IMG/VR virus record: IMGVR_UViG_3300049215_000529
Location: 140,191-204,190 of that record
Strand: one strand, 5' to 3'
DNA length: 64,000 nucleotides
The notes beneath the pieces were generated by a model that worked only from the letters and a program-made list of their open reading frames with translations, was not told where the DNA came from and did not search any database. Shown here in pieces: positions 376-60,915 of the stretch. The position numbers and the translations under genes were made by a program. Every line of letters starts with the position of its first letter. Positions within the stretch are counted from its first letter, which is position 1.

Positions 376-1608
376 TTAAAACTGATCTTTTTCAGTACTG
401 TCAGGAAGTGCTAAAGTAGAAGAGCTGCCTGAAGAAATTACAGTGGAAATTTGGTCAAAATAATTTGCACCAACCTCGCGTTGGTGTTTTACTGCTGTAT
501 ATCCCGCTGCGACATTTTCGAATTCAGCTTCTTGCAAAGATGAGTAGGCACTCATGCCACTTGTCTTATATGCCTGCGCTAAAGTAAACATTGAATGATT
601 TAGAGCATGAAATCCTGCCAAAGTGACGAATTGGAATTTATATCCTAATGCTCCTAGTTCATCTTGGAAAGAAGCAATTTGAGATTCTGATAAATTCTTT
701 TTCCAATTGAAAGAAGGAGAGCAATTATAAGCCAAGGGCATGTTTGGGAAATTTTTATGAATTTCATCTGCAAACTCTTTAGCTTGACCAATATCGGGCG
801 TAGAAGTTTCCATCCACAACATATCCGCATAAGGCGCATAAGCCAAGCCTCGGGCAATACAATACTCTACACCATTCTTAATTTTGAAAAAACCTTCGTC
901 GGTACGCTCAGAAGATACAATGAAGGGACGATCTCTTTCGTCAGCATCTGTAGTAATTAATTTGGCTGAATCGGCATCTGTACGGGCAATGATAATAGTT
1001 CTGGTACCGCAGATATCGGCAGCTAGGCGAGCAGCGACTAATGATTTTATAAATTGATTCATGGGGACTAATACCTTGCCGCCCATATGACCGCACTTCT
1101 TTTCAGAAGATAATTGATCCTCGAAATGTACGCCAGCAGCTCCCGCCTCAATCATACCCTTCATTAATTCAAAAGAATTAAGAGGTCCACCAAAGCCTGC
1201 CTCGGCATCAGCTACGATAGGAGCAAGCCAATATCTTTGAGGACATCCCTCCGCGCTCTCTATCTGATCAGCCCTAAGAAGTGCTGAGTTAATCTTTTTG
1301 ACAACACTTGGAACGCTATTAGCAGGATACAAAGATTGGTCAGGATACATTTGACCAGCTAGATTAGCATCTGCCGCTACTTGCCAGCCCGAAAGATAAA
1401 TCGCATGGAGCCCAGCTTTTACTTGTTGAACTGCCTGGTTACCAGTTAAAGCTCCCAAAGCTTTTACATATGGATCTACATTAAACAGAGTCCACAATCT
1501 TTCACAACCTAATTTTGCTATTGTATACTCGATTTGAAAGGAACCCCTTAATTTATCCACATCTTGCTTAGAGTAAACACGGAATTCATTAGGCTTATAG
1601 ACACTCAT
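376..1608 (-). CDS. aceA: Isocitrate lyase
   Basis: Catalytic KKCGHMGGK motif, plus [17 protein letters not shown] and YNCSPSFNW. Confidence 0.97.
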
Positions 1609-8680: not shown

Positions 8681-9562
8681 ATGATCACGGAGCATTATAT
8701 GTCGCGACCAAAACGAATTATCACCGAGCAAGAAAAACAAAAAATTGTGGCAGACTACAAAGCTGGCGTATCACTCAAAAAATTGCAAAAAGAAACGAAG
8801 TTGCAGCAGAAGCAACTGAAATTCATTCTTGACCAATTTGATGTTCCAATTCTAACAGCATATGAAACGCAGAGACGAAAAGCGATGTTAGAAGAACGAA
8901 ACTATTTTGACGAGTTAGACGCGCTTCAATGCTATGTGTTAGGGTTGATATTCGGTGATGGATGCGTTCATTACAATCCTAAAAGATACAAATATGCTAC
9001 AACGATTGTTAGCAATGATATGGATATCTTAGAAAGTGCCAGACATTTATTAGGGACCAACTTTCCTATTACTAAGAGAAAGAAAGCCAAAGCTTATAAC
9101 CTTGTCATCAACTCCAAACATTTATGCCAAGAACTAATCAATAAGTTTCATCTACAAAGTCCCAAGAGTAGTAAATTGATTTTTCCTAACTTACCACAAG
9201 ATATGTATCAGTTCTTCGTTTCGGGACTGTTGAGCACCGATGGGTGTGTCAGAATTGACGACCGCAGAAAAAATCAATCATGTGGTATCGAGTTTTCCTA
9301 TTCTTCTAATTGTTTAGATTTCGTTCAAAAATTGCGTCATTATCTATCTAATACGCTTGATATCGCCGAAGATGGACATATCAAAACGATAAAGCGAAGT
9401 AAGAAACGAAAGAACCCCAACTACTCCTTGCGATACTCGGGAACCAATGCAACTAAGATATTAACTTGGATTTACGAAAATACCTCACCAATAACAAGAT
9501 GTCAAAGAAAATACGATATCTACCGTAATCATTTGGCTTGCGTTTCAAATTCTATAATATAG
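8681..9562 (+). CDS. Free-standing double-motif LAGLIDADG homing endonuclease
   Basis: YVLGLIFGDGC and FVSGLLSTDGC motifs; antisense to neighbours; ends in TAG. Confidence 0.88.
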   Translation: MITEHYMSRPKRIITEQEKQKIVADYKAGVSLKKLQKETKLQQKQLKFILDQFDVPILTAYETQRRKAMLEERNYFDELDALQCYVLGLIFGDGCVHYNPKRYKYATTIVSNDMDILESARHLLGTNFPITKRKKAKAYNLVINSKHLCQELINKFHLQSPKSSKLIFPNLPQDMYQFFVSGLLSTDGCVRIDDRRKNQSCGIEFSYSSNCLDFVQKLRHYLSNTLDIAEDGHIKTIKRSKKRKNPNYSLRYSGTNATKILTWIYENTSPITRCQRKYDIYRNHLACVSNSII

Positions 9563-11013
9563 CGGATACAATGTTGTTGTTCTGGTCCACTTGGCGTATA
9601 TGTAATCAATTCTTCATTATATAGTGACCCGCCTGTTTTAGCCCAAACACTATGTGCTGGGTTAATATTCTTCTTGGTATAGAAGTGAGACTGTTGCGTG
9701 ATCTTTTGATTTCCAAAAGCCACATCTGCTAAAAAGAGATATGCTGTTTTATTTGTTCCTTGAGCCCAGTAGCTACCTCTAACATCACAATAATTCATAC
9801 TCTTGGTAGAATTGGTTGCCCAGTAGATTCCATCCCCAAATGCAGACCCAGCATGGATAACGCCAGAAGGACGAATCAAAAGACCTTTGGTTGTGATACC
9901 AATCATGTTTGCACGACGAGTACCGTGCCATGCAGGAAGAACGTTTGCCTTCTTATAAAGGGCATCCATTTCTTTGGTAATGTCAATACGTTCTTTTACC
10001 CACTTAGCATATACTTCAGAAGGAGTGTATTTGCCACATTCCTTAGCAATCTTCTCGGAAGCTTCCATCCAATGCTTGTCTTCATCGTGACGAGCAACAC
10101 GGAAAACTTTATGAGTCTTTAGTTTGCCCAAGCCACCATGATTGCTTGCACGGGTACCATGTAGCATGTTATCAATCCACTTGAACACCGGATCGGAAGG
10201 ATCAACGTACTCCAAATCAGCTTTCAAAGTCGCATACTGCGAATCTACTGCGCTCTTCTTGGAGATAACTGCTTGAACGTTCTTTGCGTCAGCAAAGACG
10301 TCGAGAATGTCGAAAGCTTTATTGAGCTTATCGTCGTCGTCCAAACGTAATACGTCAGCATCAATCTTACGAGGGAGGACGTGAGGAATGTTAGAGTAGT
10401 ATTGGCTGGTAAGCTTATTCAACTCCTTGACGTCAGGCTTCTTGACGTGGATTTGCTTACGAGCTTCATCCAGAATTTGTTTGGCGAAATCAATTTGGGT
10501 TAACGACAATTGACCCAATGGACACTTGTTGGTATCAAGGTTCAATTCAACGAACTCTTGTGTAACGCCGAACCAAGTACGAACTAAGTCCTGCACTTGC
10601 GCATGAAGTTTACTAGCCGATTCGTCTTTCTCAGTGACAGTTGCGCCCAATCGTTTGAGAGCTTCCACAGAAACGGTAGAGTCTACTTTAGATTTACCCA
10701 TATCAGAGCCAACGTCAGCCTTAACCAACTTGACTTCAACATAGCCCTTTTTGGTTTTGGACTTGATAATCTTCTCGGCTTCTTTTTCGGCATCAGCCTT
10801 ATCTTCGCAGACACGATACTCTTTGGCGCCAGAAACACCAACACGCCCATACTGCGTATAGATATAGTACTTACCATCATTGGATTCAATCAACTCCAAG
10901 TTGTAATACTTGTTATTGTTATTGATGATGTCAGTAAAATTTAGAGTATAACGCTTAAAAACGTCTTTGATGGAAACTTGAAGTTCATCTTCTCTGATAA
11001 CAGGCTTAGCCAT
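9529..11013 (-). CDS. PARP-like ADP-ribosyltransferase (WGR + helical regulatory + catalytic domains)
   Basis: QYGRVG (WGR), LTSQYYSNIPH (regulatory), and WHGT...GDGIYWA...YNEELI (H-Y-E triad). Start taken at MAKPVIR. Confidence 0.92.
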   Translation of the reverse strand: MAKPVIREDELQVSIKDVFKRYTLNFTDIINNNNKYYNLELIESNDGKYYIYTQYGRVGVSGAKEYRVCEDKADAEKEAEKIIKSKTKKGYVEVKLVKADVGSDMGKSKVDSTVSVEALKRLGATVTEKDESASKLHAQVQDLVRTWFGVTQEFVELNLDTNKCPLGQLSLTQIDFAKQILDEARKQIHVKKPDVKELNKLTSQYYSNIPHVLPRKIDADVLRLDDDDKLNKAFDILDVFADAKNVQAVISKKSAVDSQYATLKADLEYVDPSDPVFKWIDNMLHGTRASNHGGLGKLKTHKVFRVARHDEDKHWMEASEKIAKECGKYTPSEVYAKWVKERIDITKEMDALYKKANVLPAWHGTRRANMIGITTKGLLIRPSGVIHAGSAFGDGIYWATNSTKSMNYCDVRGSYWAQGTNKTAYLFLADVAFGNQKITQQSHFYTKKNINPAHSVWAKTGGSLYNEELITYTPSGPEQQHCIRYIIEFETQAK

Positions 11014-11377
11014 TTTTAACCTTGGTTCGTTTACGTGGTTGAGGTGCCTCAAGTGGAGGCTCGGGCTCTGACGCCAGTGGCGCCGTGAGCCTCGTCAAAA
11101 TCAAGTCCATTATAAGGCTGATCATGCCGCCAGCAAGACCCCAGCAAATTAATAAATTGAGGCTCCATATTTTTTCGTGCAATAAATAGACGAACCAACC
11201 ACAATGGAAACCAAGGCAGAAATAACAATCCAGTAATTTATAAAAGAATGTACCCACATGAGGGTTTTTAAAGAGTTCATTACGGGCTCTTGCCATCAAA
11301 CCCCAGGGACCGTCTGATTCTTTAATAAAGAAAGCTAGACCAAAAATGGCACCAACAACAATTATGAAATCCAACAT
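11006..11377 (-). CDS. DUF1360-like membrane protein
   Basis: Hydrophobic segments and an LLDCYFCLGFH motif. Confidence 0.55.
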   Translation of the reverse strand: MLDFIIVVGAIFGLAFFIKESDGPWGLMARARNELFKNPHVGTFFYKLLDCYFCLGFHCGWFVYLLHEKIWSLNLLICWGLAGGMISLIMDLILTRLTAPLASEPEPPLEAPQPRKRTKVKNG

Positions 11378-14975: not shown

Positions 14976-16850
14976 TTACTTGACCAAATCCAAAAACTCT
15001 TCTTCCGAAATCAAGTTAGTGCCCAGCTTACGTGCAGCTTGCGCCTTTGAACTTGTGCTGCTAGGGTCAGCAATTACCAAGTAGGTAAGTCCTTTGCCCA
15101 CAGAACTCTTAACATCAGCACCAGCCTCAGCCGCCATCTTCTCCAAGAGTGGGCGCTTGTTCTTCATAGCGCCAGTGAAACAGACTGACTTGCCAGTCAT
15201 ATTACCAATTATTTTGGCTTTGACCTCTACTCCATTGTTAAGTAAGTCCAAAATCAATTTCTGATTGTGTCGCAAACCATCTGCCAAGAACTTTGCCTTG
15301 GTCGGACCAACACCCGGCACTTGTTCAAAGGCTTCGGCATTGAGTTGCCCAAACTTCTCTAGTGTATCACAGCCCGCGTTCATGATTGCCTTGATTGTGC
15401 TTTGACCAATCATCGGAATACTAAGGGCTCCAAGCAAAACTTCCAGACCAATCTCTTTGTTAGCCCATAGAATGTCCAAACACTTCTGCGCGGTCTTGTC
15501 CCCCAAGCGATCTAGCTCAGAGATATCTGTTAGCTTCAAGGTGTATAGGTCAGCAACTGTAGTAACCTTCTTGGCATCCACTAGTTTCTCAACCAAAGAA
15601 TCGCCCCACTCAAGTAGATTAAGCTCTTTGACCCAGTTCTTGATACGACCAATGACCTGTGCACGGCAACGTTTAGTGTTGCCACACATCAAATTCTCAC
15701 CATCCATCTTGGTCAGACCGCCACATTCAGGGCAGAAGTGAGGCGCCTTGGCAACTTTGCCAGTACCCTTGACCAACTCTTCAATGCGAGGGATAACATC
15801 ATTGGCTCGGGCAACCAAAACAGTTGCGCCGATATCCAACTTCAACTCTTCAATGTATGACATATTGTAGATGCTAGCTCGGGTGACTGTCGCGCCCACT
15901 AGTTGCACAGGATCAACCACAGCAACCGGAGTAATACGTCCGCTGTTACCTACTTGCCAAATGATATCACGAATGACTGACTCGCGAGCTTCGTTATCAA
16001 ACTTGAAAGCAATAGCTCCCTTGGGTCGCATATCCTTGTCACCAAGTGCAAGTTGCTTCTCCATGTTGTCAACACGAATTACCAAGCCGTCGATATCGTA
16101 ATCCAACTTGTCACGCTTGTCATCTTGATACTCTCGCCAATGCTTATTGACCATATCAGCATTCTTCATTACCCACCAGTTGGGGGTATCGAGGTCTTGA
16201 TTGACGAGCCATACGAATTGCAACTGCTCATTACCAAAGTCTACATCGCCTAGCACCTGATAGAACATGATGTTGAGCTTATCAACACCTACGCCATCCA
16301 AGCGCTTGCTGGTACCAGAGGCTGCATTACGAGGATTAGCCTTGTCAGCAAAGTATTGCTTGTGGTTGCTCCTGGTCATGATAATTTCGCCACGCAAGGA
16401 ACCAGTAAACTTGTCTTTCAGATGAGACCGAACACCACCCATCTTAACAACGTTGACTGTAATGTCTTCACCAGTCTCGCCATCACCACGAGTAATGGCT
16501 TGTACGAGGCTACCCTTTTCGTAAATCAGCTCGATGGATAGACCGTCAAGCTTCTCAGTAACGAAAAGTTTGCCATCAGGGTAAGTATCTTCAACCCATT
16601 TGGACAGCTCGGCAGGTGTATTGACTTTATCCAATGAGCCCATGGGGATTTGATGCTTGGCTTTCTTCCATTCAGAAGGGACGATAGGAGCACCAATTGC
16701 AGTGACAGCCTTGCTGGTAGGGTCTAAAGTTCGCAATTCATCTACCCAGGCATCGTATACCTTATCCGAAACAGAGGGTTGATGGTTGTAATAATCAGTG
16801 CGGGCTTGGAAAATCTTGTTTTCTAGCTCTTTGATACGATCCTTCGTCAT
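14976..16850 (-). CDS. ligA: NAD+-dependent DNA ligase
   Basis: EKLDG, TRGDG, NPRNAASG, Zn finger, HhH and C-terminal BRCT. Confidence 0.97.
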   Translation of the reverse strand: MTKDRIKELENKIFQARTDYYNHQPSVSDKVYDAWVDELRTLDPTSKAVTAIGAPIVPSEWKKAKHQIPMGSLDKVNTPAELSKWVEDTYPDGKLFVTEKLDGLSIELIYEKGSLVQAITRGDGETGEDITVNVVKMGGVRSHLKDKFTGSLRGEIIMTRSNHKQYFADKANPRNAASGTSKRLDGVGVDKLNIMFYQVLGDVDFGNEQLQFVWLVNQDLDTPNWWVMKNADMVNKHWREYQDDKRDKLDYDIDGLVIRVDNMEKQLALGDKDMRPKGAIAFKFDNEARESVIRDIIWQVGNSGRITPVAVVDPVQLVGATVTRASIYNMSYIEELKLDIGATVLVARANDVIPRIEELVKGTGKVAKAPHFCPECGGLTKMDGENLMCGNTKRCRAQVIGRIKNWVKELNLLEWGDSLVEKLVDAKKVTTVADLYTLKLTDISELDRLGDKTAQKCLDILWANKEIGLEVLLGALSIPMIGQSTIKAIMNAGCDTLEKFGQLNAEAFEQVPGVGPTKAKFLADGLRHNQKLILDLLNNGVEVKAKIIGNMTGKSVCFTGAMKNKRPLLEKMAAEAGADVKSSVGKGLTYLVIADPSSTSSKAQAARKLGTNLISEEEFLDLVK

Positions 16851-25333: not shown

Positions 25334-26530
25334 TTAGGCGCCGTAATCAGTTTTCCAAGGAGGGAATCCGAGAACTACGAACAAATCCAGTTTGTTAGGA
25401 GTCGCATTGACTTGGGTTCGTGTAACTGAGCCGTAACTGACAGCAATCACATCGTCCAATTTGTATTTCAAAAGAGAATTGTTGGCAAAAACAATAGTAC
25501 TTCCATTGCCACCAAATAAGAATAATCGATCGTAAATAATCGCAAGTTGCGATTGAGAAACTTCTCCAGGAATAGATGTCTTTGTATCTATCCATGAAAA
25601 TGGATTAGACAATTGACATCTTAAGATTCTTGTTGGAGAAACATAACCATCAGTTGGAGTAAATAAAAATCCTTGATTACCTACTGTGGCAAACTGACCA
25701 TAAAAACATGGAAATGGTAAAAAGCTAGTAAAAGACCAAGTAGTTGGTGTATTAATCGGTGCTGAATAAATATTCTTGGTAGTAGTATTATTGGTCGTTA
25801 ATCCGCCAAATAATATCGCATATCCATCTACAATAGCTAGCTGTGAACCATATAAAGGATCTGGTAAAGTCTGTCCGGTATCACTCCACGATAGTGGGCT
25901 GCTAGTTGGGGCGCTTAGAATGGCTTTGCTTGGACCATATCCATCATAGCCGCCAAATAAATACATGTAACCATCAATAATGCCCAATTGGGAATGATGA
26001 AGATTTTTTGGCAGAATATAACCATCATTGGTCCAGTTTAATGGATTAGAGGTTGGAGCCGACAGAACTGCATTGGTTGGTGTTCCAAAGGTAGCATCTG
26101 TAGTTCCACCAAACAAATAGACAGAGTTGTTTACAATAGCTAATTGCGAGCCAGCAAGCGGTATTGGCAATTTAGCGCCAGTATCAGCCCAAACACCCGG
26201 ATTATTAACGGGGGCACGAAGAATCTTGGAACTGTTCTGTCCACCAAATAAATAGACATAACCATCAATAACAGCGGTTTGTGAATCACAGGTGTAGCAT
26301 GGAAGCACTCTTCTGGTAGTAGACCAGTCTTCTGCATTAGGTAAATTGAAATTAGCTACAACACTAGGATCAAGAATTTCATAAGCAGTAACATCCACTA
26401 ACGGACTAGGACCTGATTTATCGCCAGTATATAGCGCACCAGTGAAATCCGGCGTATCATTCACTACCCAAGTTCTATATTGTATTGGAGACGAATCAAC
26501 GTCTCTGCCAAGCATTTTGAAGCATACCAT
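25334..26530 (-). CDS. Kelch-like beta-propeller protein
   Basis: Repeated (I/V)xDGYxYLFGG units with W-terminating blades. Confidence 0.8.
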   Translation of the reverse strand: MVCFKMLGRDVDSSPIQYRTWVVNDTPDFTGALYTGDKSGPSPLVDVTAYEILDPSVVANFNLPNAEDWSTTRRVLPCYTCDSQTAVIDGYVYLFGGQNSSKILRAPVNNPGVWADTGAKLPIPLAGSQLAIVNNSVYLFGGTTDATFGTPTNAVLSAPTSNPLNWTNDGYILPKNLHHSQLGIIDGYMYLFGGYDGYGPSKAILSAPTSSPLSWSDTGQTLPDPLYGSQLAIVDGYAILFGGLTTNNTTTKNIYSAPINTPTTWSFTSFLPFPCFYGQFATVGNQGFLFTPTDGYVSPTRILRCQLSNPFSWIDTKTSIPGEVSQSQLAIIYDRLFLFGGNGSTIVFANNSLLKYKLDDVIAVSYGSVTRTQVNATPNKLDLFVVLGFPPWKTDYGA

Positions 26531-28864: not shown

Positions 28865-29779
28865 TTACCCTCTTGGAAAGAATGAAGAATCAGATCTGTT
28901 GAATAATTGACTGTCTAAAGCAATAAGCTTATCGAAGTCTTCTACCGCATAGAAAGCAGGATCAATGGCTTTCATGCCATATTTTGCGCCAAATAAGGCG
29001 CCGACAATAGCGGCAGTCGTGTCAGTATCTCCACCAGCCTTGATAGCAGTTACCACTGCATCATAGTAGTTATCAAACTTCAAGAAGCAATATAGTGCTG
29101 CTGGAACTGTTTCTTGAACGTTAGCCTTGGTACCAAGTACCTTGAGAGCTTGCCGTGGGCTAATGTGGTCAGAGCTAATCAAAGCATCTAAACTATAGAC
29201 AGTATTCTTTACCTTACTATCTGGCAAGTGAGCCCAAATCTTTTCTAACAAATTGTCAGAATCATCATTGACAGCGTAATAAGCTGCCACTGCAATAGCA
29301 ATCGAACCAGCCTCAGCATCTGGTGATACGTGGGTGATAGCACTATCAACTTTACAGATATCGACTAATGATTTGAGGTCATTGCGGAAATAGACTCCAA
29401 ATGGTGCGGAGCGCATAGCGGTACCATTGCCAAGAGAGCCAACAATACCAGATTCACTCCAATGTTTGCCAGAAGTCAAATTCTGAATTGCCATCAAGGT
29501 AGTTTTGCCCCAACCTCTAGCTCGACCAGAAGTCATCCAATCTACGTACCTAGCAGACAAATCGTCTGGATTGAAACCACGATTCTCAATTAGAGATTCG
29601 GCAACCATCAAACTCATTTGAGTATCATCTGAGTATTGTCCTGGTTGTAGCTTATGGTGTTCACTACCCAAGAAACTTTTGCCATCCCATTCCAATAAGG
29701 CTGGGTTGTTTATTAGCTTAGTTTCAAACGGAACGCCAAGTGCATCTGCAACAGCTGTTCCTAATAGTACGTTACTCAT
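28865..29779 (-). CDS. ADP-ribosylglycohydrolase (ARH/DraG family), copy 1
   Basis: AVADALG, YSDDT, GNGTAMR, TH and GGDTDT motifs. Confidence 0.95.
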   Translation of the reverse strand: MSNVLLGTAVADALGVPFETKLINNPALLEWDGKSFLGSEHHKLQPGQYSDDTQMSLMVAESLIENRGFNPDDLSARYVDWMTSGRARGWGKTTLMAIQNLTSGKHWSESGIVGSLGNGTAMRSAPFGVYFRNDLKSLVDICKVDSAITHVSPDAEAGSIAIAVAAYYAVNDDSDNLLEKIWAHLPDSKVKNTVYSLDALISSDHISPRQALKVLGTKANVQETVPAALYCFLKFDNYYDAVVTAIKAGGDTDTTAAIVGALFGAKYGMKAIDPAFYAVEDFDKLIALDSQLFNRSDSSFFPRG

Positions 29780-30341
29780 GTATTATTCCTTCTAATAGCA
29801 TTGCCAACACATATGCATGTCCCACTTTTAGATTTGGATTGTTAACTAGTTCCCAGTAATCAAACGTACCAGGTTCCAAATTATGCGCATCAAAATCTAA
29901 AAGAAATACTTTTTCGTTAGCTTTAGCTAGATCTTTTAATTTTTCAAAAGCAAACGTTCGCTGTACTGCACGAGCATATAGCGGGATGTATATTTTCTTT
30001 CTTGCTTCTACATAAGAAAATTTTTCACCGTCCCAATAAGAATACAAAGGTTTTGCTTCTTTGCCCATTGGATAACGATCGGCTCTGATTTTGTTCCAAC
30101 CGCTCTATGCCCAATCGAAATATCTTTTGCCCACAGTTCCATTATCTTCTAGATAATATTCATAGACCTTGCTATATTGCCAAGCATTTTCCATATTTTG
30201 GGAAACATAACCATTATACAACTCACATGGTCCACAAAAGAATGGGCTTAAGGACTGGCTCCAATCTTTTGATCGAGAAGTTGCATTGACCACCAAATCA
30301 CCAGGTTGGGACTTGTAGTGGTAGTTGATGACTTTAATCAT
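29772..30341 (-). CDS. Divergent NADAR-like protein interrupted by one in-frame TAG (30105-30107)
   Basis: Track ORFs 30105..30365 and 29772..30068 are in the same frame and join as YFDWA*SGWNKIRADRYPMGK; ENAWQYSK motif. Confidence 0.7.
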
Positions 30342-30463
30342 AAATATCCTTCCAAAATCATACACAAAGCAAATGCTTGTCCTACTGGGCGGTCAGGATC
30401 ATTAACCACCTGATCCCAGGATTTCTCTAGGTAACGATGATTATATCCTTCAAAATCGATCAA
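30338..30463 (-). pseudogene. C-terminal remnant of a paralog of the NADAR-like gene
   Basis: LIDFEGYNHRYLEKSWDQVVNDPDRPVGQAFALCMILEGYL* aligns with LLDFDAHN...LVNNPNLKVGHAYVLAMLLEG; ATGA overlap with 30341. Confidence 0.65.
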
Positions 30464-30508: not shown

Positions 30509-31909
30509 TTAAGCACCTTCATGACGAACTCTCTTTCTAATTTCTTCGAAATTATCGTCCACCAAAATCTCACCATTCTCATATACCGTCTTCATAACAG
30601 TGCGTTTATGAGAAACCTCATCTTCAAACAAAGGAACGGTTTCATAACCGCCGCGTTCATTGAAGCACAAATCCAAACGTCCTGCTTTGCTTGCCTTGCC
30701 CTTGTCAGTCACTGGATCTTTGAATACATCCACCGATTTGTCTCCGATGAAAATATGGCTGCACTTCATAGCAAATTTTTCAGTATCACGGTTGAGTTGT
30801 TGTAGCAAAGCGCCACCCATACCAAAAGCAATGTTCGTGGCACTGTAACCATTGTCCATCAAAGTGTCTAGGATCAGCTGGATAGACCTTTCATTGATGC
30901 CGTCGCCCTGAATGATACGGACATTTTTCAAGACCTTATAGCCCCTCTTGTTAATGGTCGTTCCAAACTTTTCTTCCAATAGTTTAACGGTCTTTAGCAC
31001 TACCGTAGGAGGATGACCAGAGTCGGGGCGAATGATGACCACTGCACCAGAATCAATCACTTCCTGCTTCAACTGATCACCCCACAAGTGAGAACAAGCA
31101 TTCCACAAGTCGTAAGAGTCCGATACACAGGCAACCAAGGCGCCCGGCTTAGCGAATTGCTTTAGCATATTACGATATGCTTCAACTTCATTTTCTTTGC
31201 CCCAAGAAGTAATGGAGCTATGTTCTGCTGCCGGAATGCTGAATCCAGCCATTGGAATATTGTAGTACTCATTGGCACATAACACTCCCACAACCGTATC
31301 ACTTCCCATAAAATTGACCAAGTGGGCTGCGCCACCAATCATAGCAGACTCTTGGCTACTAACTCCACGCGAGCCAAAGTCATGAAGCTTAAAGCTGATT
31401 TCTGCTTGCGGATCATCCGAAGATGCTTGCAATGCACGCAAAATAATACCACGAATTGTACGACTGCGGCTAGCTACCGTGATAGGATACCAAACCCTAA
31501 GCAACATGGTTTCAATCCAAGAAACAATCCAAAACACTTTCGGATCAGTAGATTCAATACTGACAAGAATATTATGGGTTGGAACCACAGTTCCTTCTGG
31601 TACGGCGCGAATACGAATGGGGAGCTTGCCTTTCAAATCTTTGGCAATGTACATCCAGCCGTCATAGTTGAATGGCTCGCCATGTGCCGCAAAGAGTACC
31701 TTGGCTTTCTCAACCTCTTCTACTGTAACTCGATGAGTCAAATATTCCTTCAAGTAGTATTGCAATCCAAAGAAAACAGTTTCACTGTATTCTCCGCCTC
31801 GGCTTTCGATGTAGGAGAACATACTTGTGGTACCAGGAGGATACTGCAAGTAGTGGGAAACTTTGTAGCTGTCTGTATCAAACAAGTAACTAAAACGATT
31901 GGTTTTCAT
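30509..31909 (-). CDS. nadV: Nicotinamide phosphoribosyltransferase (NAMPT)
   Basis: DTDSYK, HDFGSRG, PAAEHS, VSDSYD and IRPDSG motifs. Confidence 0.96.
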   Translation of the reverse strand: MKTNRFSYLFDTDSYKVSHYLQYPPGTTSMFSYIESRGGEYSETVFFGLQYYLKEYLTHRVTVEEVEKAKVLFAAHGEPFNYDGWMYIAKDLKGKLPIRIRAVPEGTVVPTHNILVSIESTDPKVFWIVSWIETMLLRVWYPITVASRSRTIRGIILRALQASSDDPQAEISFKLHDFGSRGVSSQESAMIGGAAHLVNFMGSDTVVGVLCANEYYNIPMAGFSIPAAEHSSITSWGKENEVEAYRNMLKQFAKPGALVACVSDSYDLWNACSHLWGDQLKQEVIDSGAVVIIRPDSGHPPTVVLKTVKLLEEKFGTTINKRGYKVLKNVRIIQGDGINERSIQLILDTLMDNGYSATNIAFGMGGALLQQLNRDTEKFAMKCSHIFIGDKSVDVFKDPVTDKGKASKAGRLDLCFNERGGYETVPLFEDEVSHKRTVMKTVYENGEILVDDNFEEIRKRVRHEGA

Positions 31910-31956: not shown

Positions 31957-32970
31957 TCAGAACTTGGAAACAAAATACTTTATTATATGGTAGTGGTCCT
32001 CGAAAAATTCATTCTCCATCGAATGAAATTCGCCCAAAGGTAACCAAAACGCTCTCTCTGCATCGTCAGCTCCTTTTACTTGAGGGAGTGGACCTATCCC
32101 CAAATCAATTAGGTATGCATTAGTAATAGTACGACCGCGAGCAGAACGCAAGGGGTCATCAAATACTTTAAAGTCGGCTATCGATTTTTTTAAATCTGGA
32201 GTATTAATTTTGATACCGGTTTCCTCTTTTAATTCTCTGAGGGCGGCGTCTTGCAATTTCTCTTTTTGATTGACGAAACCACCAGGCAGAGCCAGCAAAC
32301 CCTTACCAGGATTAGACCTTCTAGTCACAATCAATACGTGACCAGACTTCACAACTATTGTATCAACAGTTACAAATATGGGTGGAAATGGGGCTCCTCG
32401 CCATTGTTCTTTGTAATTGTCTATAAAATACTTTTCTTGCTTTATGTTCACGAATTCTTTGGTTTGCTTAAAATTTTCTAAATATTCAGCAACACCATTT
32501 GGTACCATTGTTTTGTAAGATGCGTTATGTGAAAAATATAAATCTCTAACTTGGGTGGCATGAAAATTATATTCTGTCCCGCATTGAATATATTTATATT
32601 GGGGAAAAAGTTTCAAATAATATGATGATTCATCACTTTCGTATCCTATTAGGGATACTTTTTCGGAATAATCCGTGGCTTCACTCACTTTTTGTTGAAG
32701 TGTTGATATCCACAAATTATCATTGTAAGTATAATCCTTCATTGAAATAAATATCACTCTATCTTTTTCTTCCGAAGAGAGACACCGCCTAATCATTTCT
32801 TGACGCTCATCGCCAGACCACGGATTTCTTATGGTGCGGGGCGAACCACAACTTCCCACCACCACAATCACCTTTTCTGCTATGGTAAGAGCTTTGTCCA
32901 AAATAAATTTGTGAGCTTTCTGAAGGGGAGAAAAACGCCCAATGAATACACAAAAATCAAATTTTTCCAT
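31957..32970 (-). CDS. Bifunctional NMN adenylyltransferase / ADP-ribose pyrophosphatase (NadM-Nudix)
   Basis: IGRFSPLQKAH and HAT motifs; Nudix box GGFVNQKEKLQDAALRELKEETG; start MEKFDF with GAGGT SD. Confidence 0.93.
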   Translation of the reverse strand: MEKFDFCVFIGRFSPLQKAHKFILDKALTIAEKVIVVVGSCGSPRTIRNPWSGDERQEMIRRCLSSEEKDRVIFISMKDYTYNDNLWISTLQQKVSEATDYSEKVSLIGYESDESSYYLKLFPQYKYIQCGTEYNFHATQVRDLYFSHNASYKTMVPNGVAEYLENFKQTKEFVNIKQEKYFIDNYKEQWRGAPFPPIFVTVDTIVVKSGHVLIVTRRSNPGKGLLALPGGFVNQKEKLQDAALRELKEETGIKINTPDLKKSIADFKVFDDPLRSARGRTITNAYLIDLGIGPLPQVKGADDAERAFWLPLGEFHSMENEFFEDHYHIIKYFVSKF

Positions 32971-33025
32971 ATTAACCTCGCTCTTCTTTAGAGCATGCAT
33001 TCGTCCTCTCAATGAGAACTTGCAT

Positions 33026-33790
33026 TCAAACATATATCACGATATTAGTAGCACAATTGGTTTGAAATTTAATAAGTTGGTCTATCCATTTTACCCACGC
33101 CGAATATGACATATCTAATTTGGCACGATTACAGACCCAGCAACAAGTTACACAATTCTGTATGGTATAATCGCTATTGCTATCCAACCTATCTATGCCA
33201 TTATAATTAAATATGATTGTGTTATCGGTTCTTTTAATAACTACAGTTTTATTGGGAGATACGCCACAATAATGGCAATCTTTAGATATTAGAGATGAGA
33301 ATTCATCATACGATAATTTCCACTCAATATTTCTGCGCTTAGCATTTCTTTTATATGAATTCAAAATTCTTTTGGTTGCTCTATCATCTTCTGATAATAA
33401 ACCAATTGTTGAGTTTTTATTTTGAGCACGCTTGCATCCGCAACTTTTTGATGCACCAGCGATTAAGTTTTTCGAAGGAATATAACAAATTGTTCCACAA
33501 ATACATTTGCATTCCCATATAATTGAGCCATTATTCGATCTTTCATCAGTGATTTTCAATACTGACAAAAATCCAAATCTCATTCCCAAAAGACATGAAT
33601 AATCTGCAAAACATACTCTTTTTCCACAAGAGCGGGAGCGACCTGTTACCAAGTCGGCTGTTCTAATTGATTTTTCAAAACCACAAATACATCTAACTAA
33701 GGTGCGAGATTTTGGCTTATTTATTTCGATTACTGTCCAAGAACCAAATTGATCATTACAAAAAACATGATATTTAGATTTTAAAGGCAT
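33026..33790 (-). CDS. HNH-like homing endonuclease
   Basis: Repeated CICG/RSCG units; CHYCG...GIDRLDS...CCWVCNRAK. Confidence 0.85.
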   Translation of the reverse strand: MPLKSKYHVFCNDQFGSWTVIEINKPKSRTLVRCICGFEKSIRTADLVTGRSRSCGKRVCFADYSCLLGMRFGFLSVLKITDERSNNGSIIWECKCICGTICYIPSKNLIAGASKSCGCKRAQNKNSTIGLLSEDDRATKRILNSYKRNAKRRNIEWKLSYDEFSSLISKDCHYCGVSPNKTVVIKRTDNTIIFNYNGIDRLDSNSDYTIQNCVTCCWVCNRAKLDMSYSAWVKWIDQLIKFQTNCATNIVIYV

Positions 33791-48969: not shown

Positions 48970-49624
48970 GTGTCCAAAATTAATGAATTCCAAGATAAGA
49001 CATTGCCACTGGAATGTGAATTTTGCCAAAATTCTTTTTATAAAGAAACCAAACAAATTCGAAGTGATCTAAAATTGGGTAAAAATAAATGTCGCTTCTG
49101 CAGCCCAAAATGTTTTAATGCATCAAGAGAGGTAAGAATACTGGCAACCTGTGCTAATTGCGAAAAAACATTTGCCATTAGATTGAGCACTAAAAAACAA
49201 TCAAAAAGTGGAAATAATTTTTGTAGTAAGAGCTGTGCTGGCACCTATAATAACACACATAAAACAAAAGGTAATAGGCGTTCCAAACTAGAAGCATGGC
49301 TTGAAAAACAATTAACTAATAAGTATCCGCTACTGAACATACTTTACAATCATAAAGAAATCATAAATTCTGAACTCGATATCTATATTCCTTCATTGAA
49401 GATTGCTTTTGAGCTAAATGGAATTTTTTCACTACGAACCTATTTTTGGTTCAAAAAAATTATCATCGATCCAAAATAATGATAACAGAAAATTTCAAGC
49501 TTGTTTGGAACGTGGTATTGAATTAGTGATATTAGATGTTTCTGCCCTCAAATATTTCAAACAACAAAATGCTGAAAAATATCTTCGCATTGTTTGTGAA
49601 ATCATTGATCTAAAATTAGAATAG
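48970..49624 (+). pseudogene. Zn-repeat plus PD-(D/E)XK-type endonuclease, frameshifted
   Basis: ELDIYIPSLKIAFELNGIF continues as HYEPIFG...DNRKF if one T is removed from the T6 run at 49424-49429. Confidence 0.78.
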
Positions 49625-49630
49625 ATTTAA

Positions 49631-50233
49631 CTATCTGGTATCTTCAATTTTCATATTCTTCATTGGAGCATAGGACATGCGATGCAAAGGAGAAGGTCCG
49701 AACTTCTCAATGGCAGCCAAGTGATCCTTTGAACCATAACCGGCATTTGAATCCCAACCGTATTCGGGATATTGTTTATGCAATAATTGCATCTTCTTAT
49801 CTCGATACACCTTGGCAAAAATGCTAGCAGCCATCACCGTTGGATACTTGCTATCCGCCTTGATGACGCTCTGGATACGATAATCATCCACGCCCAAGTT
49901 GTCAAACTTTAAAATTCCATCCACAATGATCGTTGACTCTTCGTCGTACAACCGCTTGAAGCATTCTACGTAGCAATCCTTTAAGGCAACAGCTACTCCT
50001 ACCTTATCAATCTGAACGTTGCTTCTTTCAGCAAGAGCGAACCTAATGGATGCATTGGCAATCAAATCGTTCAGCTTGTCACAGACGGATTCCCTTTTCT
50101 TAGCTGACAACTTCTTGCTATCATTGAGTCCATCGATTTTCCAATCGGCAGGAGCACGAATTGCACAAACTACCACGGGTCCAGCTAATGGACCATACCC
50201 TACCTCATCCGCCCCAATAGTATATTGTATCAT
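49631..50233 (-). CDS. rnhB: Ribonuclease HII
   Basis: GADEVGYGPLAGP, DSKKL, IVDG, KADS, AASIFAK and HRMSY motifs; ends in TAG. Confidence 0.95.
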   Translation of the reverse strand: MIQYTIGADEVGYGPLAGPVVVCAIRAPADWKIDGLNDSKKLSAKKRESVCDKLNDLIANASIRFALAERSNVQIDKVGVAVALKDCYVECFKRLYDEESTIIVDGILKFDNLGVDDYRIQSVIKADSKYPTVMAASIFAKVYRDKKMQLLHKQYPEYGWDSNAGYGSKDHLAAIEKFGPSPLHRMSYAPMKNMKIEDTR

Positions 50234-54729: not shown

Positions 54730-55425
54730 GTGGCGCCCATTATTTCGTCCCATCTTGCCTCAATTATGTCAGTATAAATCAAACTGTTCAAACCATAATT
54801 GCCTAATGCAAAAGCATCATTCACTTCCACTAATAAAGAACGTCCCTTGTCATCAACACCAAAATCAATGGAATAGGCGACTGGGGCGCCCTTATAAGCG
54901 GCGATAGCCTGTTTGATGACCGCCACGTCAGGCACCAAGCCAAAGTCGCCCTTATAGTGTTTTAAGCCCACTAAATCGCCTCGTAGGACGAATCCTCGAT
55001 ACTCTGTTACGAATTCAACGGGCTCGGAGATTTGAATCTCCATATCCATTTTCTGAGATGAGGTTTTGATTAAATCTCGGAACTGGGACACCACATGACC
55101 AACAAATTGCTTCTGAATGTAGCGCGGCTTAATGAAGACAGGCTTAACATCATAGTCTTGCTGGTGAATCTCTGCCAGAGTTCCATACCTAATATGCCTT
55201 CCACAGAAGGGTGATAGCTAGCCTATCAAATACTTTCCTTACAATAGGGATGTAACCACAAACGATATCGTCTTTGGTTAAGGGAATGTTGTCTAATTCT
55301 TCGGATTCAAACTCACCTTCAAAGAAAAGAGTTTGATATCCTTTCAATCGGAAACCTTCCCAGGCATAGTAAGTATTGGTGGTAATCAGCTCGCCATTCT
55401 TCTTTTGGCAATAAACTTTCCTCAT
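54726..55425 (-). pseudogene. ATP-grasp (R2K/DUF4343-like) protein split by a frameshift near 55215
   Basis: N-half ...VRKVFDRLA continues in another frame as SPFCGRHIRYGTL...VFIKP...EYR...DFG...VEVND. Confidence 0.7.
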
Positions 55426-55442
55426 GCTGATATACAACTTTC

Positions 55443-58999: not shown

Positions 59000-59073
59000 T
59001 GGCAGGGGCAGTAGGAATCGAACCCACGTAGGAGGTGTTGGAAGCCTCAGTCTTACCATTAGACGATACCCCT
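59000..59073 (-). tRNA. tRNA-Trp(CCA)
   Basis: AGGGG acceptor; loop TTCCAAC; G73; CCA. Confidence 0.9.
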
Positions 59074-59138: not shown

Positions 59139-59230
59139 TGGCGGAAAAGGAAGGATTCGAACCTTCGGACCACCGTTAGGCGGTCTCTTGTTTTAGAGAC
59201 AAGCGGTATAATCCACTCACCCACATTTCC
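59139..59230 (-). tRNA. Amber suppressor tRNA (anticodon CTA), serine-type body
   Basis: Perfect stem CTTGT/ACAAG; loop CTCTAAA; long variable arm GACCGCC-TAAC-GGTGGTC; G73; CCA. Confidence 0.88.
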
Positions 59231-59372: not shown

Positions 59373-59464
59373 TGGCGGAAGGTGAGGGATTCGAACCCAC
59401 GGAGGGCTTTTACACCCTCTTCAATTTAGCAAACTGACACGATAAGCCTCTCTGCCAACCTTCC
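59373..59464 (-). tRNA. tRNA-Ser(GCT)
   Basis: Loop TTGCTAA; long variable arm; G73; CCA. Confidence 0.93.
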
Positions 59465-59469
59465 GTATT

Positions 59470-59495
59470 GTATGTATTATATCTCGATATTGATA
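59470..59495 (-). promoter_or_regulatory. 26-bp promoter-like repeat, copy 1
   Basis: GTATGTATTATATCTCGATATTGATA; TATAAT on the minus strand; 25/26 identical to 61461-61486. Confidence 0.65.
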
Positions 59496-60466
59496 AGTTC
59501 GTCAGTCAAATCCTGCAATAATTCGAAGTTTTCAACGCTCTTATACTCTTCTGGAATGCCCTCTAAACCATACAGCGTGCCAGCCATAGCGCCCACTATA
59601 GCAGCCGTTGTGTCCGTATCGCCTCCACCCTTGACTGCCATCACAACACAATCTTTAAAATTATCTGTGGCGGCGAGACAATAGAAAGCGGCGGCTACCG
59701 TCTCAGGAACATAACCCCTGGTCCCGATTTCGGCAAGTGCCTCTTCTGCCGGAACCTCATCTTTCCAAAGTTCATATGCCAATTTCAATTTGGCAACAAC
59801 AATACAATCGTTAACCGAAAGGACATTAATCACTCCCGGAAGAACTCCAAGAGATGAATGTTTGACTGCTGGAACATCTCCCATAGCCAATAAAGCAGTT
59901 CCCAATGCAACTGCAATGGATCCCATTTTAGGTTCATCCGAATTGTGAGTAATGGAAGCATCTTCCACTGCAACCGACAATAGCTTGCTTAAATCATGAC
60001 GATAAGCCAAACCAATTGGTGAAGCTCTCATTGCAGTACCATTGCCACCAACAGGAGTGCCATCATTGTTAAGTGATAATCCACTTTCCAAGTAAGACAT
60101 TCCGTTCTTGATATTATGAAGAGCAGCCGCAGTAGTCCCACCAATACCTCGGGTATTACCAGACTCCATCCAAGCCAAATATCTCTGAGCAACGTCCTCA
60201 GCATTGAAGCCATTGTGTTCTACTAGGCTAGTTGCCAATGCAATACTCATTAGGGTATCGTCGGTGTATTGACCTGGTTCACCAACCCAAAACGTACCAC
60301 CAGCTTGGAACTGCCCATCCCAAGCAACTAGCTTTGGATTGTCAGCAGGCTTTGTTTCAAATGGGTTACCAAGGGCATCACCAATGGCGCAACCAACTAA
60401 TGTAGCAATCTTCTTCATTGAATACCTAATAAAATAACTGGAGGAAGTAGTAGGATTCGAACCCAC
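59477..60466 (-). CDS. ADP-ribosylglycohydrolase (ARH/DraG family), copy 2
   Basis: AIGDALG, YTDDT, GNGTAMR, TH and GGDTDT motifs; true start probably MKKIATL just after tRNA-Ser(TGA). Confidence 0.93.
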   Translation of the reverse strand: MGSNPTTSSSYFIRYSMKKIATLVGCAIGDALGNPFETKPADNPKLVAWDGQFQAGGTFWVGEPGQYTDDTLMSIALATSLVEHNGFNAEDVAQRYLAWMESGNTRGIGGTTAAALHNIKNGMSYLESGLSLNNDGTPVGGNGTAMRASPIGLAYRHDLSKLLSVAVEDASITHNSDEPKMGSIAVALGTALLAMGDVPAVKHSSLGVLPGVINVLSVNDCIVVAKLKLAYELWKDEVPAEEALAEIGTRGYVPETVAAAFYCLAATDNFKDCVVMAVKGGGDTDTTAAIVGAMAGTLYGLEGIPEEYKSVENFELLQDLTDELINIEI

Positions 60467-60529
60467 GGAAGGCTATTAACCCCCTTTCGCTTTCAAGGCG
60501 AACGCGATAAACCACTCTGCCATACTTCC
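60439..60529 (-). tRNA. tRNA-Ser(TGA)
   Basis: Loop CTTGAAA; long variable arm; CCA. Confidence 0.92.
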
Positions 60530-60734
60530 CTAATTGCTTCTACTCTCTTCTTCTCTTTAACCAAAATTTTGTCGTATTTCTTTACAAGATCCGCCATACA
60601 ACTAAGTAACCTACTTTAATGATTCATCTTCATCCACTTTCTTGAAAAGCTTTTCAACCTTAAGTTGGACATCAAGAATCTCACGACCAACTGCTCTTTT
60701 AATGCACTTATCACACATTGTTAACTCTTAATAT

Positions 60735-60822
60735 TGGAGGAAATGGTGGGATTCGAACCCACGGAACCTTTCGGTTCTCTTGTTTAGTAGACAAGCCTTA
60801 TAAACCACTCTAGCACATTTCC
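60735..60822 (-). tRNA. tRNA-Ser(ACT), rare A34 anticodon
   Basis: Stem CTTGT/ACAAG; loop CTACTAA; long variable arm; CCA. Confidence 0.85.
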
Positions 60823-60825
60823 ACT

Positions 60826-60915
60826 TGGAGGAATGGGAGGGATTCGAACCCTCGGACGTCTTGCGACGCCACAACCTTTCCAGGGTTGCCAGTTAAGCCA
60901 CTCCTGCACCATTCC
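60826..60915 (-). tRNA. tRNA-Ser(GGA)
   Basis: Loop CTGGAAA; long variable arm; CCA. Confidence 0.93.

What the first reader, a model, noticed from the sequence alone, without database searches (positions are those of the whole stretch)
59139..59230. Serine-type amber suppressor tRNA in a region that almost never stops at TAG
It is a well-formed type II tRNA (long variable arm, G73, encoded CCA) with anticodon CUA. SerRS does not read the anticodon, so it should be charged with Ser. Reading terminal codons by hand for roughly 90 ORFs, I found only three TAG ends: the LAGLIDADG, the frameshifted nuclease and RNase HII, the last with TAA four codons later. All others are TAA or TGA. No widespread in-frame TAG was seen, so the code is not reassigned. 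This looks like a pre-recoding or conditional read-through state with at least one candidate dependent gene (30105). It could also disrupt host TAG-terminated genes or rescue amber-inactivated ones.
Basis: partly seen in the sequence, partly recalled or inferred. Interest (0 to 1): 0.8.

Follow-up and report, generated by a model that had tools for sequence, protein, structure and literature searches.

The report
Serine amber-suppressor tRNA in huge phage
A very large phage from moss metagenomes carries a serine tRNA whose anticodon has mutated from CGA to CUA, so it should read the UAG stop codon as serine, in a phage group that already avoids UAG stops and normally carries other UAG-reading tRNAs.

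Summary
The tRNA is real and lies exactly where reported (window 59139-59230, minus strand). It has a long variable arm, G1-C72, G2-C71, G73, an encoded CCA and anticodon CUA.

It sits in a conserved tRNA block. In eight related huge phages the same slot holds tRNA-Ser(CGA). It is therefore a one-base (G35 to U) derivative, a natural counterpart of E. coli supD. Two independent read-set assemblies show no difference across it.

The code is not reassigned. In 324 kb of this phage only one conserved gene has an in-frame TAG. This gene is a NADAR-like DUF6939 gene. It is not frameshifted and not a recognised nuclease.

TAG ends about 2% of genes, against 36% for TGA. The closest relatives that still have Ser(CGA) are equally TAG-poor, so the depletion predates this tRNA.

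Every relative sampled at a second locus carries one or two short CUA tRNAs with strong covariation. This phage has lost that segment.

The best reading is suppressor turnover in a standard-code, TAG-poor phage clade. Function, the inserted residue and dependence of the TAG gene are untested. It is a new variant of a known kind, of moderate interest.

The parts
59139..59230 (-). tRNA-Ser-type amber suppressor, anticodon CUA, class II, G73, encoded CCA
   Evidence: ARAGORN. Rfam RF00005 scores 55.6 bits. It aligns with the Ser(CGA) orthologues of relatives. Two read-set assemblies show zero differences across it.
59194..59196 (-). Anticodon CUA (reads TAG on the + strand). The middle base, 59195, is the one that differs from the CGA of the orthologues.
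   Evidence: Sequence. The orthologues carry CTCGAAA where this tRNA has CTCTAAA.
59373..59464 (-). tRNA-Ser(GCU), the upstream neighbour and a synteny anchor
59000..59073 (-). tRNA-Trp(CCA), the downstream neighbour and a synteny anchor
59477..60466 (-). ADP-ribosylglycohydrolase gene embedded in the Ser tRNA block. It was used to fetch the syntenic loci.
   Evidence: Pfam PF03747, E = 6.6e-71. Orthologues at 55-73% identity in 20 or more IMG/VR contigs.
60439..60915 (-). Paralogous tRNA-Ser genes: UGA (60439-60529), ACU (60735-60822) and GGA (60826-60915)
29772..30365 (-). DUF6939 gene with a NADAR-like fold, interrupted by a single in-frame TAG. The likely start is the ATG at 30341. It is the candidate suppression-dependent gene.
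   Evidence: Translation. Both halves hit PF22075. Homologues are single ORFs of about 190 aa. The C-terminal half is not decayed. Fold match to NADAR structures 8bat and 2b3w.
30105..30107 (-). The in-frame TAG codon, in the context GCA TAG AGC. The aligned residue in homologues is variable: Q, T, I, L, E or M.
49616..50233 (-). RNase HII gene ending in TAG (49631-49633), with a TAA four codons downstream
   Evidence: Pfam PF01351. Read-through extension LNLF then stop. Orthologues in G006 and G007 end in TAA.
55189..55437 (-). Hypothetical 82-aa ORF ending in TAG. The next stop is 12 codons on.
   Evidence: No Pfam hit.
8681..9562 (+). LAGLIDADG homing endonuclease ORF ending in TAG, on the minor strand
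   Evidence: Pfam PF14528 and PF00961..

Best explanation
The gene encodes a phage tRNA-Ser whose anticodon changed from CGA to CUA by one base, a natural counterpart of the E. coli supD suppressor.

Shown:
- It is a sound class II tRNA with the bacterial serine identity set.
- It occupies the slot that holds tRNA-Ser(CGA) in related huge phages.
- The CUA anticodon is the consensus in two read sets.
- The phage uses the standard code.
- TAG ends only about 2% of its genes.
- One conserved gene carries an in-frame TAG.
- This phage lacks the short CUA tRNAs that its relatives keep at another locus.

Inferred:
- The host SerRS, which ignores the anticodon, charges it with serine.
- During infection it competes with RF1 at UAG.
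- Read-through costs the phage little, because its few TAG-terminated genes gain only 4-26 residues before the next stop.
- Read-through allows full-length synthesis of the TAG-interrupted NADAR-like protein, at a position where homologues tolerate many residues.
- It took over the amber-suppressing role that the ancestral short CUA tRNAs play in this clade. What that role is remains unknown. Candidates are read-through of host or competitor TAG stops, buffering of amber mutations, or gating of accessory genes.
For: tRNA quality:
-.
[quoted passage not shown] Serine identity is independent of the anticodon (PMC9976931).

Orthology to Ser(CGA):
- The same slot, Ser(GCU)-X-Trp(CCA) next to the ARH gene, holds CGA in L034/L050, L035, L039, L041, L042, L043, L044 and L053.
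- The first 20 nt are identical to the L044 CGA tRNA. The T arm and G73 are as in L034.

Consensus in reads.

Standard code:
- Coding density is 93.3% with code 11 and 92.6% with TAG read as sense.
- There is one homology-supported in-frame TAG in 324 kb.

Selection specifically against TAG: TGA ends 36% of genes and TAG about 2%, although the two codons have the same base composition.

Clade-wide suppressors:
- Short CUA tRNAs are present in L119-L127, L129, G006-G009 and G011.
- In one family of these, 12 of 19 pairs show compensatory changes while the CUA loop stays conserved.

Loss in this phage:
- The roughly 3.2-kb segment between the tmRNA and the next conserved gene is absent.
- No tRNA remnant is left there.
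- No other stop-anticodon tRNA occurs in 324 kb.

The interrupted gene:
- The C-terminal half of DUF6939 keeps all family motifs.
- It is as similar to homologues as the N-terminal half.
Against: - There is no functional evidence of any kind. Aminoacylation, expression and suppression are untested, and no RNA run was listed.
- The acceptor stem has a derived U6-U67 mismatch.
- The contigs examined drop rare variants, so a minority CGA allele cannot be excluded.
- The TAG depletion predates the mutation, so it says nothing about how old or how useful this tRNA is.
- TAG stops are not conserved among orthologues, and no conserved read-through target exists in relatives that carry suppressors.
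- One interrupted gene is weak evidence. A relative has an in-frame TGA in a conserved PTH2-like gene without a matching suppressor.
- That the loss of the old suppressors and the gain of the new one fall in the same lineage has roughly a 1 in 6 to 1 in 11 chance under independence.
- About a quarter of the genome is unsampled. CheckV rates the 204-kb record as 47% complete.
Confidence: 0.6

Rival explanations
1. Neutral or mildly harmful accident. A recent anticodon mutation hit a redundant tRNA gene, since UCG can be read by the phage tRNA-Ser(UGA). It persists only because this TAG-poor lytic phage tolerates it. On this view the TAG in DUF6939 is an unrelated fresh nonsense mutation, the gene is a pseudogene, and the loss of the old suppressors is coincidental.
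For: - The change is unique to one lineage among about 20 sampled.
- The stem has a derived U6-U67 mismatch.
- The UCG share of Ser codons is unchanged at 6%.
- TAG paucity predates the change.
- Nonsense-interrupted conserved genes occur in relatives without a matching suppressor.
- Relatives have no conserved TAG targets.
Against: - Rfam scores this tRNA highest among the window's long-arm tRNAs, so it shows no decay.
- CUA is the consensus in two read sets.
- The clade conserves amber suppressors under clear structural constraint, so suppression seems to be wanted.
- The only nonsense-interrupted conserved gene in 324 kb carries exactly the codon this tRNA reads, and its downstream half is intact.
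Confidence: 0.3
2. Real code change. TAG is a serine sense codon used widely in the part of the genome not yet sampled, for example in late or lysis genes, as in recoded crAss-like and Lak phages.
For: - About a quarter of the expected genome of roughly 430 kb is missing.
- Recoded phages concentrate in-frame stops in late genes (bioRxiv 10.1101/2021.08.26.457843).
Against: - Portal, large terminase, a protease-like protein and DNA polymerase are all intact under code 11.
- Coding density is 93% with code 11 and is no better with TAG read as sense.
- There is one in-frame TAG in 387 ORFs.
- The complete relatives G007 and G011 carry CUA tRNAs and are not recoded either.
Confidence: 0.04
3. Artefact. 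The CUA is an assembly or sequencing error, or a rare variant of a CGA gene.
For: - All IMG/VR copies are identical and probably come from one data source.
- Contigs hide minor variants.
Against: Two different read sets, assembled independently by Logan at about 12x, give the same base with no differences over 3.5-5 kb.
Confidence: 0.03
4. A role outside translation. The molecule would act as a decoy or substrate for a host tRNA-targeting defence, or in some other RNA role, and would not decode UAG appreciably.
For: - Neither this phage nor its relatives show a conserved UAG target.
- The clade keeps CUA tRNAs without using TAG as a sense codon.
Against: - It has the full canonical tRNA architecture, with an encoded CCA and an intact T loop for EF-Tu and ribosome use.
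- It derives from an ordinary decoding tRNA.
- The specific depletion of TAG stops, but not of TGA, is what real suppression would select for.
Confidence: 0.03

Closest known systems
E. coli/Salmonella supD (serU) amber suppressor, tRNA-Ser(CGA) to CUA. The attribution is from my own knowledge. A Salmonella 'serine suppressor' strain is mentioned in PMC5571418.
   Same: The same isoacceptor type and the same single anticodon change (G35 to U). Serine is the expected residue, because SerRS ignores the anticodon (PMC9976931).
   Different: supD was selected in the laboratory in a cellular chromosome. This one is phage-encoded, is the consensus allele in wild moss-associated populations, and sits in a genome with almost no TAG stops.
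Phage T4 psu1+ serine-inserting suppressor, derived from the T4 tRNA-Ser gene (from my own knowledge, not checked here)
   Same: A phage-borne tRNA-Ser converted into a nonsense suppressor by anticodon mutation.
   Different: The T4 suppressor was a laboratory-selected mutant, whereas this one arose in nature. T4 does not belong to a clade that carries suppressors as standard equipment.
Suppressor tRNAs of stop-codon-recoded phages: crAss-like, Lak and jumbo phages, code 15 (bioRxiv 10.1101/2021.08.26.457843; PMC9523058; PMC13037316)
   Same: A phage-encoded CUA tRNA. TAG is depleted as a stop. The proposed route is stop depletion, then suppressor tRNA, then in-frame stops.
   Different: Those genomes have many in-frame TAGs, read as Gln, and some encode RF2. 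Here there is one in-frame TAG, the tRNA is serine-type, and no release-factor gene was found in 324 kb.
Standard-code phages with a predicted suppressor tRNA and no known target, for example Stenotrophomonas phage Summit (PMC9022506) and the standard-code Agate relative with a TGA suppressor
   Same: A suppressor tRNA in a genome that uses the standard code, with targets unclear.
   Different: Here the precursor tRNA (Ser-CGA) is identified by synteny. A candidate target gene exists. The clade context shows that older suppressors were replaced.
The short (73-76 nt) CUA tRNAs at the Thr-tmRNA-Arg(CCU) locus of this phage's relatives
   Same: The same anticodon and the same clade. Presumably the same role.
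   Different: They differ in tRNA class, amino-acid identity is unknown, and they lie at another locus. They are conserved across at least 10 relatives with covariation. They are absent from this phage.

Membership tests
tRNA (Rfam RF00005) | Cloverleaf that scores above the family's gathering threshold | tested here: met
   55.6 bits against a threshold of 29. ARAGORN cloverleaf.
Bacterial class II tRNA-Ser | Long variable arm with a stem | tested here: met
   A variable stem of about 7 bp, and 92 nt in total.
Bacterial class II tRNA-Ser | G1-C72 and G2-C71, with G73 as discriminator (A73 would point to Leu or Tyr) | tested here: met
   Sequence. Criteria from PMC9976931.
Bacterial class II tRNA-Ser | Orthology to a tRNA-Ser gene | tested here: met
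   The syntenic slot holds Ser(CGA) in eight relatives. The sequence mosaic matches the CGA tRNAs of L044 and L034.
Bacterial class II tRNA-Ser | Charged with serine by SerRS | not testable with these tools
   Inferred from the identity elements only.
Amber suppressor tRNA (supD-like) | Anticodon CUA in a canonical 7-nt loop with U33 and a purine at position 37 | tested here: met
   The loop is C-U-CUA-A-A.
Amber suppressor tRNA (supD-like) | Inserts an amino acid at UAG in vivo | not testable with these tools
   No RNA run was listed. No proteomics is available.
Stop-codon-recoded phage (TAG as a sense codon) | Many conserved genes with in-frame TAG, and better coding density when TAG is read as sense | tested here: not met
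   One such gene in 387 ORFs. Density is 93.3% with code 11 and 92.6% with TAG as sense.
Stop-codon-recoded phage (TAG as a sense codon) | Phage-encoded RF2 or a code-change module | tested here: not met
   PF00472 is absent from G000, G013 and G014. The genome is incomplete.
tRNA-Pyl (ARAGORN's label) | Short variable loop and a compact D loop typical of tRNA-Pyl | tested here: not met
   It is a class II tRNA with a long variable arm. The label follows from the anticodon alone.
tRNA-Sec | Anticodon UCA and an 8/5 acceptor/T-stem arrangement | tested here: not met
   The anticodon is CUA and the stems are 7/5.
NADAR/YbiA-like fold (for the TAG-interrupted DUF6939 gene) | Fold similarity to solved NADAR proteins | tested here: inconclusive
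   The model of the G004 orthologue has pLDDT 98. Foldseek matches 8bat at probability 0.99 with TM 0.42, and 2b3w at probability 0.96. The profile search against PDB sequences gives only E = 0.23.

The most novel reading that the evidence does not exclude
Amber suppression is a selected, long-maintained trait of a clade of huge phages (about 430-480 kb) that nevertheless use the standard code. When one lineage lost the ancestral suppressor tRNAs, a tRNA-Ser(CGA) was recruited by a single anticodon change. On this reading the suppressors, which in relatives sit next to a phage tmRNA, form a termination-manipulating module. The module would act on host or competitor UAG stops, or gate accessory genes such as the TAG-interrupted NADAR-like gene in the NAD+/ADP-ribose cluster. 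It would be a stable alternative to full recoding rather than a step towards it.
Probability: 0.3. Interest if true: 0.75.

Novelty: new variant of a known kind. Interest (0 to 1): 0.55.

Why it matters
Phage suppressor tRNAs are known mainly from genomes that have already reassigned TAG or TGA, and there the inferred residues are Gln and Trp. This case differs in three ways.

- **The origin is visible.** The precursor, tRNA-Ser(CGA), is identified by synteny, and the change is a single base.
- **The predicted residue is unusual.** Serine has not been reported for phage stop-codon reading.
- **The setting is informative.** The clade is TAG-poor, uses the standard code and keeps amber suppressors under clear structural constraint without obvious in-frame targets.

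This makes two questions directly testable. What are suppressor tRNAs for in phages that are not recoded? And is the state 'rare stop plus suppressor' a stable strategy or a step towards recoding?

It also matters for annotation. One gene in an NAD+/ADP-ribose cluster that looks like a counter-defence module would be miscalled as two fragments or as a pseudogene.

Tried and rejected
- **GenBank phage records.** Megablast and tblastn found no close relatives. I used IMG/VR instead.
- **Loose screen for in-frame stops.** Requiring a homologue alignment to span the stop by at least 15 aa gave many false positives for all three stops: antisense ORFs, upstream extensions and tRNA DNA. After inspection and a stricter screen only the DUF6939 TAG survived in this phage, plus one TGA in G006.
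- **TAG-joined same-frame ORF pairs in relatives.** These turned out to be ordinary adjacent genes, each with its own start.
- **Conserved TAG-terminated genes or read-through extensions across orthologues.** None were found. TAG stops are sporadic.
- **Release factor (PF00472) and class II aaRS (PF00587) genes.** None were found.
- **Amino-acid identity of the relatives' short CUA tRNAs.** I compared them with the paralogues in their own genomes and found no clear parent.
- **A shift in UCG codon usage after the loss of Ser(CGA).** There was no signal.
- **Remnant of the old suppressor in the 258-nt interval.** None was found.
- **RNA runs.** None was listed.
- **Promoter scan.** One 10/12 match lies upstream of tRNA-Ser(GCU), but the number of sites is no higher than in shuffles.
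- **Origin from the neighbouring tRNA-Ser(ACU).** I considered this because the two share the 5' acceptor strand and the anticodon stem. I rejected it in favour of the CGA slot on synteny and on the matches to L044 and L034.
- **Host identification.** I did not attempt it beyond noting the tmRNA tag.

Full report
**What the window is.** The window is the last 64 kb of a 204,190-bp IMG/VR virus record (G000). It has 39.5% GC, about 86% of its ORFs lie on the minus strand, and it carries 32 tRNA genes. Portal, large terminase, a protease-like protein and a DNA polymerase identify it as a tailed phage. GenBank phages hold no close relative. Public runs that contain it are moss metagenomes. CheckV rates the record 47% complete. 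Two further IMG/VR contigs of the same phage overlap it perfectly. For counting purposes I joined the three into 323,761 bp. Related contigs reach 447-481 kb and are rated complete, so this is a huge phage of roughly 430-480 kb.

- ARAGORN and Rfam both find a tRNA at 59139-59230 on the minus strand. The Rfam score is 55.6 bits, the best among the five long-arm tRNAs in the window.
- The cloverleaf has a 7-bp acceptor stem with one U6-U67 mismatch, the anticodon loop C-U-CUA-A-A, a variable arm of about 7 bp, a canonical T arm, G73 and an encoded CCA.
- ARAGORN's label 'Pyl' reflects only the anticodon. The class II shape excludes tRNA-Pyl, and the 7/5 stems and the anticodon exclude tRNA-Sec.
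- G1-C72, G2-C71, the long arm and G73 form the bacterial serine identity set. [quoted passage not shown]
- Logan assemblies of two different read sets span the gene at about 12x with no differences. Contigs cannot exclude a minority allele.

**Where the tRNA came from.** The ADP-ribosylglycohydrolase gene embedded in the tRNA block (59477-60466) retrieved more than 20 syntenic loci. The conserved order is Cys(GCA), Ser(GGA), Ser(UGA), the hydrolase gene, Ser(GCU), then a variable slot, then Trp(CCA). In eight distinct relatives that slot holds tRNA-Ser(CGA) (L034/L050, L035, L039, L041, L042, L043, L044, L053). In several others the slot is empty. Only this phage has CUA there. The suppressor's first 20 nt equal those of the CGA tRNA in L044. 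Its T arm and G73 match the one in L034. It is therefore a derived G35-to-U mutant of the phage's own tRNA-Ser(CGA), the same change as in the classical supD suppressor (the supD attribution is from my own knowledge). The U6-U67 mismatch is also derived.

**The code and stop usage.** Over 324 kb, code 11 gives 387 ORFs at 93.3% density. Reading TAG as sense gives 92.6%.
- On the major strand, stops are TAA 204, TGA 119 and TAG 7 (2.1%). TAG makes up 23% of the out-of-frame stop triplets.
- The contrast between TGA and TAG, two codons of the same base composition, points to selection specifically against TAG.
- The depletion is not particular to this phage. The closest relatives, G004 and G005, keep Ser(CGA) and have 1.9% and 1.7% TAG stops. 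G006 and G007 have 3.3%, G011 has 6.0%, and two small fragments have about 10%. The depletion therefore predates the CGA-to-CUA change.
- TAG stops are not conserved between orthologues.
- In this phage the TAG-terminated genes would gain only 4 to 26 residues on read-through.

**In-frame TAG.** One case is solid. The ORFs at 30105-30365 and 29772-30068 lie in the same frame and are separated by a single TAG. The gene is not frameshifted.
- Eleven viral homologues and hundreds of database relatives are single proteins of about 190 aa that align across the TAG.
- The aligned position is variable (Q, T, I, L, E or M). The closest relative has CAA there, so serine should be tolerated.
- The downstream half keeps every family motif and is as similar to homologues as the upstream half.
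- The family is DUF6939. A confident model of the G004 orthologue (pLDDT 98) resembles NADAR and YbiA proteins, with Foldseek probabilities of 0.99 and 0.96 but a TM-score of only about 0.42.
- The gene lies between NAMPT with an NMNAT-Nudix gene on one side and an ADP-ribosylglycohydrolase on the other. This is a cluster of NAD+ and ADP-ribose genes.
- One caution applies. Relative G006 has an in-frame TGA in a conserved PTH2-like gene and no TCA tRNA. Nonsense-interrupted genes therefore occur without suppressors, and this single gene does not prove dependence.

**The clade context changes the interpretation.**
- Relatives G006, G007, G008 and G009 each carry two short (73-74 nt) CUA tRNAs. 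G011 has one, and G007 also has a UUA tRNA.
- I used the gene next to tRNA-Arg(CCU) as an anchor. Every one of ten relatives that holds this second locus has one or two CUA tRNAs. They lie between a phage tmRNA and that gene.
- One family of these tRNAs shows compensatory changes in 12 of 19 pairs while the CUA loop stays fixed. They are functional tRNAs under selection.
- None of these relatives is recoded.
- In this phage the locus is collinear with L119 except that the 3.2-kb segment carrying the CUA tRNA is missing. Only 258 nt separate the tmRNA (G000 89921-90277) from the next conserved gene, and no tRNA remnant is left.
- No other stop-anticodon tRNA occurs in the 324 kb.

**Most likely explanation.** This is a natural serine-inserting amber suppressor, made by one base change in a phage tRNA-Ser(CGA). 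It sits in a lineage of a TAG-poor, standard-code clade of huge phages that normally carries other amber suppressors and has lost them here. In short, this is suppressor turnover.
- The tRNA's structure, origin, genomic setting and consensus status are shown.
- Charging with serine, decoding of UAG, rescue of the NADAR-like gene and selection for replacement are inferred.
- That the loss and the gain fall in the same lineage is only mildly improbable by chance, roughly 1 in 6 to 1 in 11.
- The main rival is a recent neutral or slightly harmful mutation in a redundant tRNA gene, with an unrelated pseudogene.
- Artefact, full recoding and a non-translational role are unlikely, for the reasons given under the rival explanations.

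**Relation to what is known.** Borges et al. proposed a route of stop-codon depletion, then a suppressor tRNA, then in-frame stops. They noted one standard-code phage with a TGA suppressor, and they saw only TAG-to-Gln and TGA-to-Trp (bioRxiv 10.1101/2021.08.26.457843). Huge phages are known to carry tmRNAs and release factors (PMC7162821). Cultured standard-code phages with a predicted suppressor and no target have been reported (PMC9022506).

A pattern scan of IMG/VR for long-arm CUA tRNAs with this T loop found 70. Most look Gln-like and a few have A73. None is serine-like apart from this one. The scan required exact loop motifs and so is not exhaustive. The finding is thus a new variant of a known kind. 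It shows a serine-type suppressor with an identifiable precursor. It also shows amber suppressors being maintained, and replaced, in a clade that does not use TAG as a sense codon.

Noticed in passing
Outside the window: G000 89921-90277 (-) = L005 9921-10277. Also L005 10446-10738, 10776-10847 and 11657-11728.: A phage-encoded tmRNA (Rfam 96 bits; the tag, read by eye, is ANDNAFESFALAA). Beside it lie a second partial tmRNA-like copy and two degenerate tRNA-Thr genes. ARAGORN missed all of these. In relatives the tmRNA lies next to the short CUA suppressor tRNAs.
   Followed up: partly
window 60735-60822 (-); G000 137976-138061: tRNAs with A at position 34, which is unusual for bacterial systems: Ser(ACU), conserved in L038 and L039, and Leu(AAG). 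Relatives also have Ser(AGA), Thr(AGU) and Phe(AAA).
   Followed up: no
window 9529-11052 (-), 28865-29779, 30509-31909, 31957-33033, 59477-60466: A rich set of NAD+/ADP-ribose genes: a PARP-like protein with WGR, regulatory and catalytic domains; NAMPT; an NMNAT-Nudix fusion; and two ADP-ribosylglycohydrolases. With the NADAR-like DUF6939 gene, this looks like an NAD+ salvage or ADP-ribosylation-reversal module.
   Followed up: partly
window 376-1608 (-), 25334-26530 (-), 14976-16850 (-): Isocitrate lyase, a Kelch-repeat beta-propeller protein and an NAD-dependent DNA ligase, all encoded by the phage.
   Followed up: no
G006 89653-90156 (L106 9653-10156): A conserved PTH2-like gene in a relative is interrupted by one in-frame TGA (...GKA*AQSGHA...). 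No TCA-anticodon tRNA was found in that 268-kb contig.
   Followed up: partly
G007 50073-50149 (L071 10073-10149): A tRNA with anticodon UUA (ochre) sits between tRNA-Ala(GGC) and tRNA-Gln(UUG) in the complete 481-kb relative. This phage has no counterpart at that spot.
   Followed up: no
L160-L238 (IMG/VR, many from metagenome 3300045988): Dozens of CUA tRNAs of about 90 nt have a type-I-like D arm, U1 or A1, G73 and a long insert containing a conserved CTGA(A/G)GG motif in the variable region. A few A73 class II CUA tRNAs occur in contigs of 130-412 kb (L170, L177, L205).
   Followed up: no
window 8681-9562 (+) against 9529-11052 (-): A LAGLIDADG homing endonuclease ORF on the minor strand overlaps the 3' end of the PARP-like gene by 34 nt. 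It is one of the few TAG-terminated ORFs.
   Followed up: no
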